The notes under the pieces are model-generated. The model saw only the letters and a list, made by a program, of their open reading frames with translations. It ran no database searches and was not told the DNA's origin. DNA of 64,000 bases, taken from NCBI RefSeq assembly GCF_048593235.1, contig NC_133621.1:91193148-91257147 (forward strand), written 5' to 3'. This document shows positions 674-50,791 of the stretch, piece by piece. This stretch comes from Sminthopsis crassicaudata (taxonomy: Eukaryota). Each line of letters opens with the position of its first letter. Within the stretch, counting starts at the first letter, position 1. The translations under genes were made by a program, and so were the position numbers.

Positions 674-679
674 TTTATT
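674..679 (-). terminator. Candidate polyadenylation signal (AATAAA) of the unnamed zinc-finger gene
   Basis: + strand TTTATT at 674-679 reads AATAAA on the minus strand, about 600 nt past the stop at 1273. T-rich sequence follows on the minus strand. Confidence 0.45.
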
Positions 680-1272
680 TGTACAATCTTTTGAGCACAC
701 TGAAAAATATATTCTATAAAAGTGAAGCGAAATAATTATACTGATTTGAACTTCCATCTCTCAGCCCTCCTCCCCCCTGACACCACAGAATGAAGTTTCC
801 ACCCTGGAGCTCTATACCCTGGAGTCTCAAGTCTCAGATCTCTTTGTTCCCACATTTGTTACAAATGAGGTGATAATGAAGGGAGCAGTAGTTCTGACCA
901 AAGCAACTATGCTCAGCAAGATGGGTTCTCCTAAGTCTTGGGACACCAAGTAATTCCAGGGAATAGCAGGCACTAGATAGGCCACATACACCTGCAAGAT
1001 CCAGTCCTTCCACTCTCTTGGACTTCTCACCACCATCATGGACCTACTCTCTCATCTCATCTTTTTCTATAGTTAGAGGTTGGAACGCAGAACACAACAG
1101 ATGTGACTTCAGTGAACTGTCTTTGTATGGTCTTATTACAGGTGATATTCTAGGTGGAGGAGCACTGAGCTTGGCTTAGGTGCCCCTCAGTTCCACAGCC
1201 ATAGTTGAATGCACAAGTCTGGAGAGACCCTTCTTGGGCAAAGCTCCAGCTCCAGCAAGGACAGAAGTAGCA

Positions 1273-1800
1273 TCACTGCTCCTCAGAGACCTCAGAGCAT
1301 TGGGGTGAAGTAGGGGACATTCTGGCATGGGTACGCTGATGGTTAAGGAGGAAGCGGGCCTCTCGGAAACAGCGCCTGCACTGAGCACACTGGTAAGGTT
1401 TCTTGCCACTATGGATGCGCCGATGGGTGAGCAGATTCTGTTTGAGGCTGAATCGCCGTCCACACTCAGGGCACGGGAAAGGACGCTCACCTGTGTGGAT
1501 GCGTTGGTGGACAGAGAGATTGTGCTGGATGCTGAAGGCCTTCCCACACTCAGGGCAGACATACAAAGCCCTCCCTGCTCCACTCATTCCAGTGTGAGCC
1601 TTATGGTGCCGAACTAGGCTAGACTGCTGAGGGAAGGTCTGACCACACAACAGACATCGATAGGCCTGTTCCTCTGCTGGATGGTGGATAACGAGGCCCT
1701 GATCATCACTGGGACTCTCATCATCTGCCTCAGGAGGCTCTCCTTCTAGGGGGGGCAGGTCCGACATGGGCACTTCCAACAGTTCAAGGGTTCCATTCAT
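1273..1800 (-). CDS. Unnamed C2H2 zinc-finger protein, 175 aa, 4 intact fingers; positional orthologue of mouse AI854703 / human LOC728743
   Basis: ORF contains YRCLLC..HHKAH, YVCPEC..HQRIH, FPCPEC..HRRIH and YQCAQC..HQRTH, with TGERP and SGKKP linkers. A pyrimidine tract plus ccccag acceptor puts the exon start at 1814, 14 nt before the ATG and open in frame. Orthology is from recalled gene order (next to ZNF775). Confidence 0.85.
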   Translation of the reverse strand: MNGTLELLEVPMSDLPPLEGEPPEADDESPSDDQGLVIHHPAEEQAYRCLLCGQTFPQQSSLVRHHKAHTGMSGAGRALYVCPECGKAFSIQHNLSVHQRIHTGERPFPCPECGRRFSLKQNLLTHRRIHSGKKPYQCAQCRRCFREARFLLNHQRTHARMSPTSPQCSEVSEEQ

Positions 1801-3699
1801 TAAATCACCAACCTCTGGGGAGACACAGAGAAAGGGTTTAGAAAATGGAATGGTTCCTCTCCCGACTAGTCCAGACCAGGGAAATTTCCCTGCATATTCC
1901 CTACTAACATTTTACATATGAAAACATATCAGTTAATTCTAGAACAGACTTGATATTGTCTACAACACAGTTGTCGAACTTTGTGATTTTCTAAGTCAGT
2001 GGTCTCACAGGGTTCCTTTTCCTGGTCTAGATTAAGGCCGTCATTTTGCAGGTGAGGAAAGAAAGAACCAGACAGGATGAGTATTGTAGTAATTGCTGTT
2101 GTTGTTGATCTGGGTTTGTGCCTAATGCAGGATAGCATTCATCTCTAGATTCTATTCTTAGAAAGTCTTTCAATTCAAGGACCACTCATGAATCCAGAAG
2201 AGAGATGAAGCATGTTGCCTAGCTTTTGACAGGGAGGTGATGGATGAACTTGGAATGAGTTCACATGAGACCTATATTTTTGGATGGGCAAATGCAGGAA
2301 TTTGTTTTGCTTGACTATGAATATTTCTTGTGCATAGGGTTTTTCCCTTTTTAAAAAACTAAGGATGAGAGGAGGAAAAAGTAAATTTTTATTTGGTTTG
2401 GTTGAAAAATATAAAACTATTTCAATAAATAAACTACAAAAAAAAAAAGAGTTCCTGAAGTATAGCATGGTTAACTGACTTGTCCAAAGTCATAGGGAGA
2501 GTACAATACATTTGTATTAAGTAGAGCTTAAATGCATATCCTCAAGCATCTTGCATAGTGCCCAACACTGCCTGTGGATTGATCGCCTCCAGGCTTCAAG
2601 GCCAAACTCCCTCCATTGCACTACACTATTTGTACAGTAATTCTTCATATTATATCCATAATTAAAGACTCCATTATTACCCTTGAAGATGAAGCAAGGA
2701 TGCCTTGTGTTTCTTAGTACCCTCAATGCTACCAGAAGTGAACATTCATTAGAGGAGTCAATAAATATTTATAGATTAACTCAAATTAATCTTGGGATTC
2801 CTTCATTTATCATTTTAAGTCTCAAAGGCCCTCTTCTCCCACAGGGTATGTACTCTAGTAAAAATATTAATTTTTTTTATTACCATGGGCAGTAGCAAGA
2901 GTGTGGGAATTGAAGTTAAGAAGATTCAAGACCTCAGATGCATTAACTGTACTAGAAAACTCATTTAATCTTGCATGACTCAGTTTCCTCAATTGGGAAT
3001 GGGGTTAACAATAGCATCTACCTCACAGGGCTGTTGTAAGAATTGAATGACTTAATGTATATACAGCACTATATGAATTCTAGCTATTATCACAACAGTT
3101 ATAAAAAAGTCCTTTATACTTCTTTTAGTATTTCATTTTCTTTCCTCCTTCAAGGCAGGCAGGGATTATTTATCCCCATTTTCCAAATAAGGAAACTAAG
3201 CCTTAGGAAAGTTCAATTCGGTAAATTCAATTCAGTAAACACTTATTAAGTGCCTACTGTGTGCTAGGTTCTGGTGATACAAGACAAAAATCACTCCTTC
3301 AAAGTAGAAGATCCAGCTCCGGTCCCAAGCTTTCCCCTATACTCCTGCTCTCCAGCCTTTCCTGGAAGAACAAGCATTCATTATATACCCGACACTACTG
3401 GCCACACTTGCTTCCTTTCCCAAAATTCTGTGATTTGATCTTGAAGGTCAGACTCCAGAAGTTTGGGATTAAGAGTCCTGGATTTTCATCCCCTAGAACC
3501 ACTGCTGTATACTCTTCCCTTCTCCATCTTCCCATGTGTAAAGGGGGGAGAAGGTAGGGAAGCAGAGACGACCTGGGGATATTTGGGAGCATCAAGCAAA
3601 GTCAGCGGGACAGAGACACTGGAGGCCGCCCCAGGAGGGAACCCAAATTTGGGGATTAGATAGCTCCTTTGAAAGGTCCCAAGTCCTTCCGTTGCATCA

Positions 3700-4700
3700 G
3701 TTCCTGCACCAGAGCCCGTTTAGATCTCCCTAGCCTGTCTCCTCCCACCCCAACCCCTACCGCCTAAGTAGGGTCGTCTCTCTCAGCGTTATCCGAGGAA
3801 GAGCTGGTGGTGATTCCTGACTTCTGCCCCCAGCTCCTGTGCCCGGCCCTCTGTCCCAAACTCACAAGTCTGGAATGTGTCCCAGCTCCTCCTCCTGGTT
3901 CCGACCCCACGAGAAGCTGCGCTGCATGCGGGAAATACGGTAACTTTAGGAGCCAGAGCTGGTTCCCACTGCTTCAAGGTAAATTTACAGTAAATACGGT
4001 AAACCTCCAGCTAAGCTTTCCTTTTAAATACAATAGCCCTCCCCCAGCCGCCCTTCAGGTACTGGGGTCTGCTCCGGTTTTGACTCAGAGCTCCGTAGGC
4101 CCGCTGGCCCACCCATCGCACCCCACCCTCAGCAGCAAGCCTCCAGGTTCATGCACAAAAAGGAGGCTGTAGCCGAGCTACTTGCTGCCCTCTCAAGCCC
4201 AGGCCCCATGCACTAGCGCTCTATTCAATAATTACGGTAACCCACCCGCAGCGACCTCAGGCAGCGTTAGATAAATAAGGTAATCTTCCTGCCGCAAAAG
4301 CCCACTCGGCTCTTCAGGGCTACAGGGACTCACCGCGCGACTCTCAGCAAATACGGTAACGCTTCCGCAGTGACAGCCTCAGTCCACCCACCACCTCCTC
4401 AGCGCGCCCGGTAAATACGGTAACTACCGCAGCGGTCCGCGGCTGGAGCAGGGACTTACGTGATTCTGCGGTCTGAGTGCCGAGTCCTGAGCTCTCCCCA
4501 CCACGCACGCCTCCCCAACAGCCCCAACAGCCCCAACAGCTGAGAGGTCTAACTGGCCCAAAAACCTGGCCCGCAGGAGGGAGGAGAGCTGGCGATGGGG
4601 GAGGGGTAACCAGCAACCCCAAGCGGGGGATTACTGGGAGAAACGGAAGGGTCCTCCCTGCCCCGATCTCTGCGCTCCAGAAATCATAGTATTTCGAGCT
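3700..4700 (-). promoter_or_regulatory. CpG island / promoter and non-coding first exon(s) of the unnamed zinc-finger gene
   Basis: Locally CpG-rich. Consensus minus-strand donors GCG|GTGAGT (exon end 4334) and CAC|GTAAGT (exon end 4460). No ATG in the candidate exons. Confidence 0.7.
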
Positions 4701-19713: not shown

Positions 19714-21398
19714 TTAAGGTTCTTCCTTGATGCTGTGTGCAGCAGCAAGCACCACCTGGCCCCTTGCTCTATGGACACGATGGTGTTTAAGCAAGTGCTG
19801 CTTCTGGCTGAAGCCCTTGCCACAATCAGCACATAGATAAGGCCGCTCGCCTGTGTGGTTCCGCTGGTGCCGAGTCAAGTTGGGCTTTTGGCTGAAGCAA
19901 CGCCCACAATCTGGGCAAGGGTAGGGCCGCTCCCCTGTGTGAATCCGCTGGTGGATGGTGAGCGCAGACCACCAGGTGAAGCTCTTGCCACACTCATTGC
20001 AGATGAACTGACGCTGCTCAGCAGTGCCAGATGAAGGGGCTCCTCTTCCTGCCTGGGACATGCCTACTGGGCCCCGGCCCCAGCGTGGCTCTCCGTCCAG
20101 CAAGACAAGCTCGCTCCCTTGCAGGGCCTGAGAAGCCGGCGGTGGCTGCAGAGGGAAGCCCAAGGCATACTCTGAAGCTGGCATTAAGCCCGACCTCGGT
20201 TCCACACTAGCCACAGCCACCACCATCCGGCCCCGGAGGGCTGCCCCGTGGAGCAGCTCAGCGGCAGCATGGGCCCTCTGGTGGGCTCGCAAGGCTGCCC
20301 GGCTGGGGCAGCTCTCCCCACAGCCAGGGCACAGGGAAGCCTTCTCCCCAACTCGGTGTGTGCGCTGGTGTTTGAGCAGATGCTGCTTCTGACGAAAGCC
20401 CCGGCCGCAATCAGGGCACAGGTGGGGTCGTTCACCCGTGTGGTTACGGAGGTGCCGAGTCAGATTGGGCTTCTGGCTAAAGCGCCGCCCACACTCTGGG
20501 CAAGCATATGGCTGCTCCCCTGTATGGATCCGTTGATGAATGTTCAGTGATGACCACCACGTGAAACTCTTCCCACACTCATTACAGATGAACTGGCGCT
20601 GCTCCCCAGACCCAGTAGCAGAGGCCCGAGCCTTAGCAGGTGGTCCCGGCCTCCACCCTGCACCAGCTTCCACCCAGGGACACCCTGGCAGTTCTCGTGA
20701 TGTTGATGGAGGCCGGCGGGGCTTCCGGGTCACCTTGTCTCTGAGCAGCTTCTGCAGCTCAGCACGGGCCAGCTGACGGTCACGGGCATGGGTCCTCTGG
20801 TGGATGCGCAGGGCAACTTTATGGCGGAAGCGTCGCTCACACTCAGGGCAGGAATGAATTGCAGGGCGGGAGTGTGTCTTCTGGTGTTTGAGCAGATGTT
20901 GCTTCTGGCTAAAGCGCCTCTCGCACTCAGAACAGTGGAAGGGACGTTCACCTGTGTGGTGTCTCTGGTGCCGAACTAAGTTTGGCTTCTGGCTGAAGCT
21001 CTTGCCACATTTGCCGCAGTGATAAGGTTTCTCTCCTGTGTGAGTGCGTTGGTGGATATTGAGTGAAGACCACCAACTAAACCTCTTCCCACAGTCTTGA
21101 CATGTAAAGTGTCCCTCACCTACTGGAAACTGTGGGCCAAGAGGTGCGGGGGCTGCTGTGGACCCACGGCCAGTTGACCCTCCCAACCACTGAGCACTGG
21201 GAATTCGGCCTGGGCCTTGGGCCTCCTCCCAAACTCCTGGGGCTCGAGGCTTCCCCAAAGCCTGGCGAAGTGGATGGCCCAGAGGATGCTGGAAGATATT
21301 CTCCTTGTCCTTCTCTGGCAGAATCGTGGGAGCCTCCAGGGCCTGGGGAAGCCACTCCTGCTTCTCCCATTTGATCTTTACCATGATGCTGCTGTCAC
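19714..21398 (-). CDS. ZNF775: ZNF775 main coding exon (11 C2H2 fingers)
   Basis: Translation carries ZNF775 hallmarks: [34 protein letters not shown]. Acceptor is ttttttTAGCAG|GT with exon start 21398, phase 1. Internal ATG at 21384, stop TAA at 19714. The ORF-track start at 21468 is intronic. Confidence 0.95.
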
Positions 21399-46960: not shown

Positions 46961-49024
46961 TAAAATAATAAAATGCAAACAGAATGGAAGCCAAAATAGA
47001 GGATATCAAGTATGATGGCCCAGGGGAACCATATTATCAAATACTAGTTATCTAAATATTCCAGTTCTAATATTATCTAAGCTCATGAATCTGAGGCATA
47101 TACACAAATAACTAAATATAAAGGAGTATTACTTGTAATATTGGGAATTAAATCTCCCATGGAAGGCAGAAGAAACATTTAAAGAGGTCCTATCCACTTA
47201 TTGGACCTCATTTACATACATGTATGTATGCATGTATGTTCATTTGTGTATATGAATTGACACCAAAGGAGAATTAGCCCAATACTGGCAACCAAGTGTG
47301 GGACAATTGATATTATCTAGAAATATCTTCCCTACTAAAGTCACTTTTTGATCACCATCTAGGACACAGGCTGATAAAGAGCAAAATCTGGGTCTAACTA
47401 AAGTCTGCAGCCCTTATAACATCTTAATCACACTGATGATGCTGATAGTGTCTAGACAAAACTGAATTTAGGGAACCCACATTTGGATTTTGACTGTCAC
47501 TATCTGTGTGACCTTAAATAGGCCTATGGGCCTCATTTTCTTATATATAAAATGCCAGGATTGGACTAAATAACATCTAAACTATTCTCTTCTGGCTCTA
47601 AATCTGTGATCCTAAAATAGTGGCAAAGTAAGCAATAAAGATGATTCTGCCTTCCCTAGTTTGACCTATAGGAAGACCCACAGCAAAAGAATAGGAAGAT
47701 AAAGCTCCCTGGAGATCTAGGTTCTTATCCCAATTCTATTTGTTTGCCAGAGTCCTGAATGGCTTCAGTTTGCCCTCCTAGAAAATTATCACAACCCCTA
47801 GGGCTGAAGTCGATGCATTTTTTAGAAATTCCCAGGCATAAGAAACTGTTAAAAGCCTAGTGCACTCTGGAACTCCTAAAGCAGGGGACCCCATTCTCCT
47901 TCACTCATCACTCTAAGTCCCATTGATGCTTACTTTCTTGTCTGAGTTACCTCTACACACATTTCCCTTGGAAAACAGCCTTCTCAGATGCCAACTTTTG
48001 CAATTCAACAAAGGAAGAGAATATGTTGTAGCCCTAACTGGAAATCTGTCTTATTCACTGGGACTTGAGGGAACCAGACTTACTTTGTATGGCTTGATTC
48101 CAGAGGACAGAACTAGAACTAATGGGTAGAATATAAGGAAATGCCTTTTCACTTAATGTAAAAAAGAAATTTCCAACAATTAGATATTCAGCAACAGAAT
48201 GAACTACCTTCAAAGGATTCTCCATTCCCATCACTGGAAGTGTTTAAACAGAGGCTGGTTTGTTAAATATATGAGATGAGATAAATTCCTCTATTAGATG
48301 CAAACTGGATGAATTCAAAGATCCATTTCAACAAGTTAAGATCTCTTCCATGCCTATCCCATTCCTCTGTGTCTGTCTGTCTCTGCAGTACAGTAATGAA
48401 AGCTAGAAGAGTTAAAAGAAACTAGGGATTTAGACAAAGTCTTGATCTGGGAGGGAAGGCAAAAAAAGATGATGTGTTAAGAATTCAAAGCTGAAACTAG
48501 TTATGGGTAGAGAAGTTACATATACATTAAAAAAAAAAAAAAAAAGTGAAGGAAAGGGATAGATTTGAGCTGGGAGGCAGAAGAGGGTAGGTGGGAAAGG
48601 AAGCGTGAAGGGGACCAAAGAAATCAAATGCTGCCAAAAACTGACATCACTAGGGCATTTCCTTCCCTGGACATGTCTAAATAAATCCAAATGCTGCCTA
48701 ACATATTGGAGATCTCTGCTTATGTCCCAGATGTTCTCATTTTCTCCAGCTGCTGATGCATCTTCTTTTCAAATACTTCTTCCCCAAGGGGCAAGAAGAG
48801 AAGAACTTCCAGGGAGGTGGAAACAGCCTGGGGTATCTGAAAACTTCTAACAGACGTGCTGGGGCAAGGATACTGAGTCCTTTCTCCTGGGTCCTGACCA
48901 GCTTCCAAGAGAAGCCTCCCATTGCTTACCCCATTACCATCACTAACATCCTCCATCATGACACCTTTGTTTACTCCTCAAAGTTTATCTCCTCTTTTGT
49001 CTTTGCTCTCCCACTCCTACTAGG

Positions 49025-50791
49025 TCAGGCCACATGCTTCCTCTGATGAGTCAGGAGCTTTTGCTCATGACTGAAGCTCTCACCACAGGTGGCACAGATG
49101 AATGGCCCTTCTCGACCATGGCTCTTGCGGTGTGTGATCAGGTTGGATTTCTGACTGAAGCGCCTCTCACAATCAGGGCAAGCATAAGGTCGCTCACCTG
49201 TATGGATGCGCCGGTGGGACACAAGATTAGATTTCTGGCTGAAGGCCTTGCCACAGTCAGGACAGGCATAGGGCCTCTCACCTGTGTGGATGCGGCGATG
49301 GGCTGCCAAGTAGGGCTTGTGCCTAAAAGACTTGCCACAGTCGGGGCAAATGAAGGGCCGCTCTGGGGCATGATCACGACGGTGGGCTGCCAGGTGACTT
49401 CCTTGTGAGAAACGGCGCCCACATTCCAGGCAGGCAAAGGGCCGCTCACCTGAGTGGATACGGATGTGGGCCACCAAATGGGTTTTCTTACTAAAGTTCT
49501 TTCCACATTCACTGCATATGAAAGGACGTTCTCCAGGATGAAGTTGCTGTTGACCACGCAAAGACTTTCGGTTCCGAAACGTGCGTCCACACTCATCATA
49601 GTTATAAGGGACAGCAGGATCCACTTCCTGGTCCTGCTGGGGATCCAAGACCTGGTCCTGCTGGGAGTCCATTTGGCCTTGCTGAACATCTGTGGACTGA
49701 TCCTGTTGGGATTCTATGGGCTGTTCCTGCTGAAGGTTCATGGCCTGAATTTGCTGATGATCTACAACCTGGTCCTGTTGAGGGTCTGTGATTTGATCTT
49801 GTTGAGTCTCCAAGAGTTGAGATGGAAGCTGGAAACTCCCTTGACTACTGGTGGCCTCCACAGAACCCTGAGGGCGCCGGTGAATCTTGCCATGAGACAA
49901 AAGGTTGGGTTTGTGCCGGAAGCGGCGCCCACATTCAGTGCATGGGTAAGGCTTCTCACCAGTATGAATTCGCCGGTGGGAAGTTAAGTAGGGCTTATTA
50001 GTGAAACGTTTTCCACACTCAGGGCACTGGTGGGGACGTTCACCAGTATGTACACGGCGGTGAGCAATCAGATTAGGCTTGTGACGGAAACATTTGCCAC
50101 ACCAGGCACACTGGAAAGGTCGGTCAGCAGCATCACCGCCTGGCTGAGCAGCAGTAAGTGCTGGGCGGCCCCGGGGCCGCGGTGCAAGGGCTTTTTCTGA
50201 TGCTTGTGCTTCAGCCACGTGTATCTGCTTGTGGGCAACTAGCTCAGCCCACTGTGCAAAACTCTGACCACAGCCACTGCAGATGAAACGGCGAGGTGGT
50301 GGAGCAGGTGGGTGGTTCTGTCGCAAGTGTGCGCGCAGCTGGGAGGCTCGGCTGAAACGTTTCTCACACTTGGGGCAGGCGACTGCCCGGGCAGATGAGG
50401 CATGAACCTGGCCATGAAGTGCGAGGGCTGCCCAGCTCCTGAAACTCTGCCCACAGACTTGGCAGAGGAAACCTGTAGCAGGTGGTATGGCTGTGGCAGC
50501 AGAGTGAGCCAGCCGGTGTAAAGCCAAGAAAGGAGCATGGTGAAATCGACGGCCACACTCAGGGCAAGGTAAGGGTGGACGGCCATGATGCCGACGAGTA
50601 TGATGTCGCAAGGCTGCCCATCCAGGGAAATGTCTCCCACAGCGGGCACAGCGGTAGGCACTACCCTGGAATAGGCTTCCATGACTAGCTGCCACATTAC
50701 CTTCTAATTTAATCCTACGCGGATCCTGATCTGACCCTTGGAGCGACTCCCGAAAGGATCCAGAGAAAAGCCGAGGCCGAGTTGGACCCAT
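49025..50791 (-). CDS. REPIN1: REPIN1 (RIP60) main coding exon, 588 aa from first ATG; 15 finger positions, finger 9 degenerate
   Basis: Diagnostic peptides: [63 protein letters not shown]. Acceptor ctttctccccAG|CAG| at 50838/50835; stop TGA at 49025. Confidence 0.97.
49616..49804 (-). repeat. REPIN1: Coding tandem repeat, about 8 x 24 nt (QQDQxxDP) inside REPIN1
   Basis: [63 protein letters not shown]. Confidence 0.9.

What the first reader, a model, noticed from the sequence alone, without database searches (positions are those of the whole stretch)
1150..1275. Fossil fifth zinc finger in frame behind the stop codon of the unnamed ZNF gene
Reading through the TGA at 1275-1273 gives C-YFCPCWSWSFAQEGSLQTCAFNY-GCGTEGHLSQAQCSST-stop (1152-1150). 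This fits the C2H2 grid Y-x-C-x2-C-x3-F-x5-L-x2-H-x3-H exactly at Y, C, F and L. The other three ligands have decayed (C>W TGG, H>C TGT, H>Y TAT). The TGA is what CpG deamination of an Arg CGA codon would give. From recall, eutherian orthologues end in ...GERRPYFCARCGKSFAREGSLKTHQRSH. The inference is lineage-specific truncation followed by neutral decay, while fingers 1-4 stayed intact.
Basis: partly seen in the sequence, partly recalled or inferred. Interest (0 to 1): 0.7.

Follow-up and report, generated by a model that had tools for sequence, protein, structure and literature searches.

The report
Decayed fifth zinc finger behind stop
Just behind the stop codon of a small marsupial zinc-finger gene lies the decayed remnant of a fifth finger that placental mammals and lizards still use; all nine marsupials checked share the truncation, so it is an old, ordinary domain loss.

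Summary
On the minus strand, TGA 1275-1273 ends a 175-aa four-finger protein. The same frame stays open for 40 codons to TAG 1152-1150.

This post-stop peptide is the orthologue of the fifth C2H2 finger of eutherian AI854703/"LOC728743 homolog" proteins:
- It aligns without gaps at 15/29 residues (E 2e-8).
- It matches finger 5 far better than fingers 1-4.
- The DNA stays colinear as far as the eutherian stop.

Hamster has CGG CGA where marsupials have CAG TGA, which fits CpG deamination.

The window matches Sminthopsis crassicaudata. The truncation is not dunnart- or dasyurid-specific. Predicted proteins of nine marsupials from five orders, opossum included, end at the same residue. TGA sits there in all four marsupial DNAs I could read.

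Among marsupials, fingers 1-4 are under purifying selection (omega 0.10-0.19). The relic is not (omega 1 or more, no codon periodicity). It diverges like the rest of the 3'UTR, carries further stops in three species, and lost different ligands in different lineages.

A contig from a different sample and study confirms the TGA. No SECIS or other Rfam match was found.

Verdict: a real relic of an ancient, marsupial-wide truncation. It is neat but ordinary. The scan holds no other note of this kind.

The parts
1273..1275 (-). TGA stop codon of the marsupial gene. It aligns with the second Arg codon (CGA in hamster) of the eutherian GERRPYFC.
   Evidence: A contig of run X10 (different sample and study) covers 749-1900 and shows no difference here. 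Sarcophilus, Antechinus and Dromiciops have the same TGA.
1201..1269 (-). Relic of the fifth C2H2 finger, 23 codons (YFCPCWSWSFAQEGSLQTCAFNY). Y, C1, F and L are kept. C2 is W, H1 is C and H2 is Y.
   Evidence: No Pfam hit.
1162..1272 (-). Whole stretch colinear with the eutherian C-terminal tail, from the codon after the stop to the TGC that aligns with the eutherian TGA stop. Dasyurids carry a 9-bp in-frame deletion after ...TEG.
   Evidence: Codon alignment with Cricetulus and three marsupials.
1150..1152 (-). TAG that closes the post-stop open frame in Sminthopsis.
1276..1800 (-). Coding sequence of the 175-aa isoform, starting at ATG 1800-1798. The four intact C2H2 fingers lie at 1662-1594, 1563-1495, 1479-1411 and 1395-1327.
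   Evidence: zf-C2H2, four stretches, E 4.8e-23. The last 180 aa are identical to the Sminthopsis crassicaudata protein P0126. Omega is 0.10-0.19 among marsupials.
674..1814 (-). Last exon. The acceptor AG is at 1816-1815. A putative AATAAA lies at 679-674. The relic lies in the 3'UTR part of this exon.
   Evidence: Contigs of runs X5 and X6 (guessed to be RNA) join 1814 to upstream exons that end at 3866 and 5214, both followed by GTGAGT. The AATAAA was read from the sequence. The poly(A) site itself is not shown.

Best explanation
Window 1272-1162 (minus strand) is a dead remnant of the C-terminal fifth C2H2 zinc finger and tail of the marsupial orthologue of mouse AI854703 / 'LOC728743 homolog'.

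In an ancestor of all living marsupials, a nonsense mutation cut the protein after the linker that follows finger 4. The mutation was most simply CGA to TGA at a CpG. The downstream codons then became 3'UTR. They have since drifted without protein-level constraint, and each lineage lost zinc ligands in its own way. The four-finger protein stayed under purifying selection.

Shown here:
- homology of the relic to finger 5;
- the same protein end in nine marsupials, and the same TGA in the four with DNA;
- the contrast in selective constraint before and after the stop;
- correctness of the TGA.

Inferred:
- a single event on the marsupial stem;
- CpG deamination as the mutational route;
- absence of any present function of the relic.
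For: 1. Gapless match of 15/29 to the eutherian tail, E 2e-8.
2. The match is specific to finger 5: 11-12/23 against 3-7/23 for fingers 1-4.
3. Codon colinearity runs to the eutherian stop, with hamster CGG CGA against marsupial CAG TGA.
4. Nine marsupial protein models from five orders end at ...EQ or ...QQ at the same position.
5. Lizard orthologues keep a terminal finger that matches eutherian finger 5 at 13/24. The finger is therefore ancestral and marsupials lost it.
6. Between Dromiciops and the dasyurids the CDS has omega 0.10-0.12, and 0.15-0.19 within dasyurids. Between Dromiciops and the dasyurids the relic has 14-17 nonsynonymous-type against 1-3 synonymous-type codon changes, omega 1.2-4.8, Fisher p from 8e-4 to 3e-6.
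7. The relic shows no third-position excess. Its nucleotide divergence (0.17-0.19) equals that of the rest of the 3'UTR (0.20).
8. Further in-frame stops exist: TAA in Sarcophilus and Antechinus, TGA in Dromiciops. Ligand losses differ by lineage.
9. A contig from a different sample and study (X10) spans 749-1900 with no difference at the stop.
Against: - DNA behind the stop could be read in only four marsupials, three dasyurids and Dromiciops. For Monodelphis and the four others only the predicted protein end is known. A separate CGA>TGA hit in opossum is therefore not formally excluded.
- The ancestral codon is inferred from one eutherian DNA sequence.
- The 3'UTR, relic included, diverges at about half the synonymous rate of the CDS (0.19-0.23 against dS 0.38-0.42). 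Weak non-coding constraint cannot be ruled out.
- The read evidence is assembled contigs, not raw reads.
Confidence: 0.9

Rival explanations
1. The TGA is read through, or decoded as selenocysteine, so the finger-like extension is still made in the dunnart.
For: The frame stays open for 40 codons in Sminthopsis. No frameshifting indel lies in the 87-nt core in any of the four marsupials.
Against: - Three of the four zinc ligands are gone.
- Sarcophilus and Antechinus have an extra TAA, and Dromiciops an extra TGA, in the same frame.
- The relic has omega of 1 or more and no codon periodicity.
- No SECIS or any other Rfam match at E up to 1 in 1-2000.
- From my own knowledge, the base after the stop is T (TGA-T), not the readthrough-prone TGA-CTAG context.
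Confidence: 0.02
2. The stop is an assembly or sequencing error, or a private allele of the sequenced animal.
For: None was found. Most laid runs gave no contig over the site, because a filter leaves out human-like records.
Against: A contig of run X10, from another sample and study, is identical at 1273-1275. The same TGA is in three other marsupial assemblies. Nine protein models share the end.
Confidence: 0.01
3. The short form is ancestral, and eutherians gained the fifth finger by losing the stop.
For: Only one eutherian DNA sequence was compared. The linker before the finger is poorly conserved.
Against: Anolis, Eublepharis and other squamate-like orthologues end in a finger that matches eutherian finger 5 at 13/24, E 6e-9. 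A complete C2H2 finger is not expected to arise from untranslated sequence. The marsupial relic still carries finger residues.
Confidence: 0.03
4. The relic is kept recognisable because it now serves as a regulatory element of the 3'UTR.
For: The divergence of the relic and the rest of the UTR between Dromiciops and the dasyurids (JC 0.19-0.23) is below the CDS dS (0.38-0.42) and a little below the DNA beyond the putative poly(A) signal (0.28-0.31).
Against: The relic is no more conserved than the remaining UTR. Within dasyurids its divergence (0.067-0.083) is close to flanking DNA (0.067-0.094). NG86 dS and all-site JC distances are not strictly comparable.
Confidence: 0.05

Closest known systems
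Fifth (C-terminal) C2H2 finger of eutherian AI854703 / 'zinc finger protein LOC728743 homolog' (for example Capra ibex P0005, Cricetulus P0003)
   Same: It holds the same position, 20 residues after finger 4. It aligns without gaps at 15/29 residues. The DNA is colinear to the eutherian stop.
   Different: In marsupials it lies behind a TGA. It lacks three of four zinc ligands in Sminthopsis, shows no protein-level constraint, and gets no Pfam hit.
Domain loss by a premature stop that leaves former coding sequence in the 3'UTR (a general, well-known route of protein truncation; from my own knowledge)
   Same: A nonsense mutation at a CpG-containing Arg codon, an upstream ORF that is retained and constrained, and decay downstream.
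   Different: Nothing differs in kind. This is an undescribed example in an uncharacterised gene. The literature search found the gene only in gene lists.
Degenerate fingers inside the arrays of live C2H2 proteins
   Same: The finger spacing is kept while ligands are mutated.
   Different: Those fingers are still translated. This one lies downstream of the stop, and in three of the four species the frame holds further stops.

Membership tests
C2H2 zinc finger (Pfam PF00096) | Two Cys and two His at C-x2-C-x12-H-x3-H spacing | tested here: not met
   In Sminthopsis only C1 remains. C2 is W, H1 is C and H2 is Y.
C2H2 zinc finger (Pfam PF00096) | Profile match above the Pfam threshold | tested here: not met
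   The 40-aa post-stop piece matches no family at E up to 10. The upstream ORF scores 80.7 bits with four stretches.
Orthologue of the eutherian AI854703 / LOC728743-homolog gene | Closest relatives carry that name, and fingers 1-4 are colinear | tested here: met
   The best non-marsupial hits are 64-78% identical, including Jaculus 'Expressed sequence AI854703' and Echinops 'LOC728743 homolog'.
Orthologue of the eutherian AI854703 / LOC728743-homolog gene | Conserved neighbourhood next to ZNF775 | tested here: inconclusive
   The eutherian chimeric models P0029 and P0002 join ZNF775-like fingers to this gene. Those fingers match window 19720-21126 on the same strand. Eutherian gene order itself was not examined.
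Non-functional relic of coding sequence | Homology to a functional coding segment elsewhere | tested here: met
Non-functional relic of coding sequence | Loss of protein-level constraint compared with the intact part of the gene | tested here: met
   Relic omega is 1 or more against 0.10-0.19 for the CDS. Fisher p is 8e-4 to 3e-6. Substitutions are equal at the three codon positions.
Non-functional relic of coding sequence | Not translated | not testable with these tools
   No ribosome profiling or proteomics is available. Indirectly, there are extra stops in three species and no SECIS.

The most novel reading that the evidence does not exclude
The relic, together with the rest of the 3'UTR, has been exapted as regulatory RNA. 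This would explain why it is still 52% identical in translation to the eutherian finger after more than a marsupial crown age, and why it diverges at about half the synonymous rate of the CDS.
Probability: 0.05. Interest if true: 0.3.

Novelty: new member of a known kind. Interest (0 to 1): 0.2.

Why it matters
It gives a clean, datable case of a zinc-finger protein losing its terminal finger. The loss predates the last common ancestor of living marsupials, and the protein then persisted under selection with four fingers. The isolated fifth finger is therefore dispensable for whatever this uncharacterised gene does in marsupials.

It is useful for annotation: the marsupial 175-aa models are correct and not truncated by error. 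It also serves as a small marker shared by all marsupials checked. It does not open a new question.

Tried and rejected
- Dating the truncation by a molecular clock failed. Hamster-marsupial dS is saturated (1.9-2.6), and that scaling gives 36-59 My. Scaling by the Dromiciops-dasyurid divergence of the relic, by hand and with a split age of about 60 My taken from my own knowledge, gives roughly 200-300 My. The two disagree, so I rely only on the phylogenetic distribution.
- The LWL85 method crashed on saturation.
- The intron alignment with Dromiciops was unusable (p about 0.58), so it could not serve as a neutral yardstick.
- DNA for Monodelphis, Macrotis, Notamacropus, Petaurus, Trichosurus and Elephantulus could not be fetched. 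The sample files were too large or the product was not on record.
- Of the four runs laid, only X10 covers the stop. The others show holes, probably because a filter leaves out human-like records.
- The Rfam scan found nothing.
- The literature search found only gene-list mentions of AI854703/LOC728743. A second paper search was rejected for a syntax reason and not repeated.
- A words search of earlier scan notes found nothing similar.

Full report
**What is there.** On the minus strand, the last exon of a small zinc-finger gene begins at 1814, with the acceptor AG at 1816-1815. It encodes a 175-aa product from ATG 1800-1798 to TGA 1275-1273, with four C2H2 fingers. Beyond the TGA the same frame stays open for 40 codons, CYFCPCWSWSFAQEGSLQTCAFNYGCGTEGHLSQAQCSST, and ends at TAG 1152-1150. 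Pfam sees four fingers upstream (zf-C2H2, 80.7 bits) and nothing in the post-stop piece at E up to 10.

**Which gene and which genome.** The last 180 residues equal the C-terminus of a Sminthopsis crassicaudata protein (P0126), so the window is fat-tailed dunnart. The best non-marsupial relatives are eutherian proteins named 'Expressed sequence AI854703' (Jaculus) and 'LOC728743 homolog' (Echinops). Squamate proteins carry the same name. Two eutherian chimeric gene models (P0029, P0002) fuse ZNF775-like fingers to this gene. Those fingers match window 19720-21126 on the same strand. This agrees with the first-stage note that ZNF775 lies there. It hints at conserved neighbourhood, although I did not examine eutherian gene order directly.

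**Is the relic real?** Yes.
- Eutherian orthologues continue after finger 4 with ...ARMPAPHPRRPGVFGERRPYFCARCGKSFAREGSLKTHQRSHGHGPEGQAAHLGRVL.
- The post-stop piece aligns to the Capra ibex tail without gaps at 15/29 residues, E 2e-8.
- Over the 23-residue finger it matches eutherian finger 5 at 11-12 positions, 7-8 of them among the 16 non-grid positions. It matches fingers 1-4 of the eutherian or the dunnart protein at only 3-7 positions. This is positional orthology, not general finger likeness.
- A tblastn alignment of the Elephantulus protein runs through the stop, down to 1219.
- At DNA level the colinearity reaches the eutherian stop, which aligns with TGC 1164-1162.

**The mutation.** Hamster has CGG CGA for the two arginines of GERRP. 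All four marsupial DNAs have CAG TGA. Both differences are CpG transitions, one on each strand. Several other differences in the relic are of the same type where hamster has a CpG (CGC to TGC, CGT to CAT or CAA). The caveat is that the ancestral codon rests on one eutherian DNA sequence.

- The 90%-identity cluster holds protein models from Sarcophilus, Antechinus, Sminthopsis, Macrotis, Notamacropus, Petaurus, Trichosurus, Dromiciops and Monodelphis. All end at the same residue...EEQ...GEQ or ...EQQ. These species cover five orders and, from my own knowledge of marsupial phylogeny, the deepest split among living marsupials.
- I could fetch DNA for Dromiciops (L001), Sarcophilus (L002) and Antechinus (L003). 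All carry TGA at the same codon, followed by a homologous relic.
- Dromiciops and the dasyurids share derived, finger-killing changes relative to hamster: K to W, the first His to Tyr, and Q to A. The finger was therefore already dead in their common ancestor.
- Squamate orthologues end in a finger that matches eutherian finger 5 at 13/24, E 6e-9. Marsupials lost the finger; eutherians did not gain it.
- A single nonsense mutation on the marsupial stem is the simplest account. Without opossum DNA, a parallel hit at this hypermutable codon is not formally excluded.

**Decay after the stop.**

| Ligand (hamster codon) | Sminthopsis | Antechinus | Sarcophilus | Dromiciops |
|---|---|---|---|---|
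| C1 (TGC) | C (TGT) | C (TGC) | N | W |
| C2 (TGC) | W | W | W | C (TGT) |
| H1 (CAC) | C (TGT) | Y (TAT) | Y (TAT) | Y (TAT) |
| H2 (CAT) | Y | D | D | C |

- The dunnart's H-to-C change at H1 therefore took two steps.
- Sarcophilus and Antechinus have an extra TAA, and Dromiciops an extra TGA, in the frame. Dasyurids carry a 9-bp in-frame deletion.
- Between Dromiciops and the dasyurids the 175-codon CDS has omega 0.10-0.12. Its differences concentrate at third positions (0.20-0.22, against 0.03-0.07 at positions 1 and 2).
- The relic has 14-17 nonsynonymous-type against 1-3 synonymous-type codon differences, with omega 1.2-4.8. Substitutions are about equal at all three positions. Fisher p against the CDS is 8e-4 to 3e-6.
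- Within dasyurids the counts are too small to reach significance, but they point the same way.
- Relic divergence equals that of the remaining 3'UTR: 0.17-0.19 against 0.20 for Dromiciops versus dasyurids, and 0.067-0.083 against 0.074-0.087 within dasyurids.
- So fingers 1-4 are maintained and the relic carries no protein-coding constraint.

**Is the TGA an error?** No. A 1306-nt contig from run X10, a different sample and study from the likely source of the assembly, covers 749-1900. It differs only at 981 and 1011. Contigs from X5 and X6 end at 1814/1815 and continue into sequences found at 3866 and 5215 of the window. This shows spliced transcripts that join upstream exons, each followed by GTGAGT, to this exon. 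With the exon that ends at 3866 the junction reads T|AG in frame. Translation must then start at ATG 1800, which yields the 175-aa form.

These are assembled contigs, not raw reads. The other runs had holes over the fingers, probably because the tool silently leaves out human-like records.

**Rivals.**
- Readthrough or selenocysteine is unlikely. The ligands are lost, three species carry further stops, omega is 1 or more, and there is no SECIS or other Rfam match in 1-2000.
- Eutherian gain is unlikely, given the reptile terminal finger.
- A regulatory role for the UTR cannot be excluded. UTR divergence is about half the CDS dS. The relic does not stand out from the rest of the UTR, however.

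**What failed.** A clock date could not be obtained, because hamster-marsupial dS is saturated and two scalings disagree several-fold. DNA of opossum and five other species could not be fetched.

**Known or new?** The gene appears in the searchable literature only in gene lists. I found no description of this truncation. The phenomenon itself is a nonsense mutation that removes a terminal domain and leaves its coding relic in the 3'UTR, which is well known. I rate it a new member of a known kind, with low interest.

Noticed in passing
proteins P0077 (mouse Q8BIN4), P0073, P0045 (Castor), P0012 (Echinops): After finger 3, the mouse and beaver models read like out-of-frame translations of fingers 4-5. 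The tenrec protein has mutated ligands in fingers 4 and 5. The C-terminal end of this gene may be eroding in several eutherian lineages too, or these models may contain errors.
   Followed up: no
window 834-1013 and 736-855 (minus); proteins P0025 (Vombatus), P0134 (Sarcophilus): Ensembl-type isoforms leave finger 2 after ...IQHNLS and continue in short ORFs that lie in the 3'UTR of the window. This implies a cryptic intron that would remove fingers 3-4 and the relic. In the dunnart, the AG that precedes the CAAATG segment in Sarcophilus and Antechinus reads AA.
   Followed up: partly
window 3866 and 5214 (minus), joined to 1814: Two alternative upstream exons are spliced to the last exon in contigs of runs X5 and X6 (guessed to be RNA). 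Both donors are GTGAGT. The 3866 junction creates an in-frame TAG, so that isoform starts translation at ATG 1800.
   Followed up: partly
window 19720-21126 and 49019-50662 (minus): There are two further multi-finger C2H2 coding stretches. The first matches the ZNF775-like part of eutherian chimeric models at 51-66% identity.
   Followed up: no
window 981 and 1011: The contig of run X10 differs from the window (G>C and C>T). These are probably polymorphisms in the 3'UTR.
   Followed up: no
protein P0013 (Logan contig, taxon unknown): This orthologue has a eutherian-like N-terminus, four fingers, a 35-residue linker and a fifth finger whose last His reads Arg (HQRSR). It may come from a monotreme or another outgroup and would help to polarise the loss.
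   Followed up: no
proteins P0009, P0006, P0011, P0016 (squamate-type orthologues): Between finger 4 and the terminal finger, reptile proteins carry about 100 extra residues with one more finger (for example FTCHECGEGFSGRSSLVSHQRAH). Mammals lack this finger.
   Followed up: no
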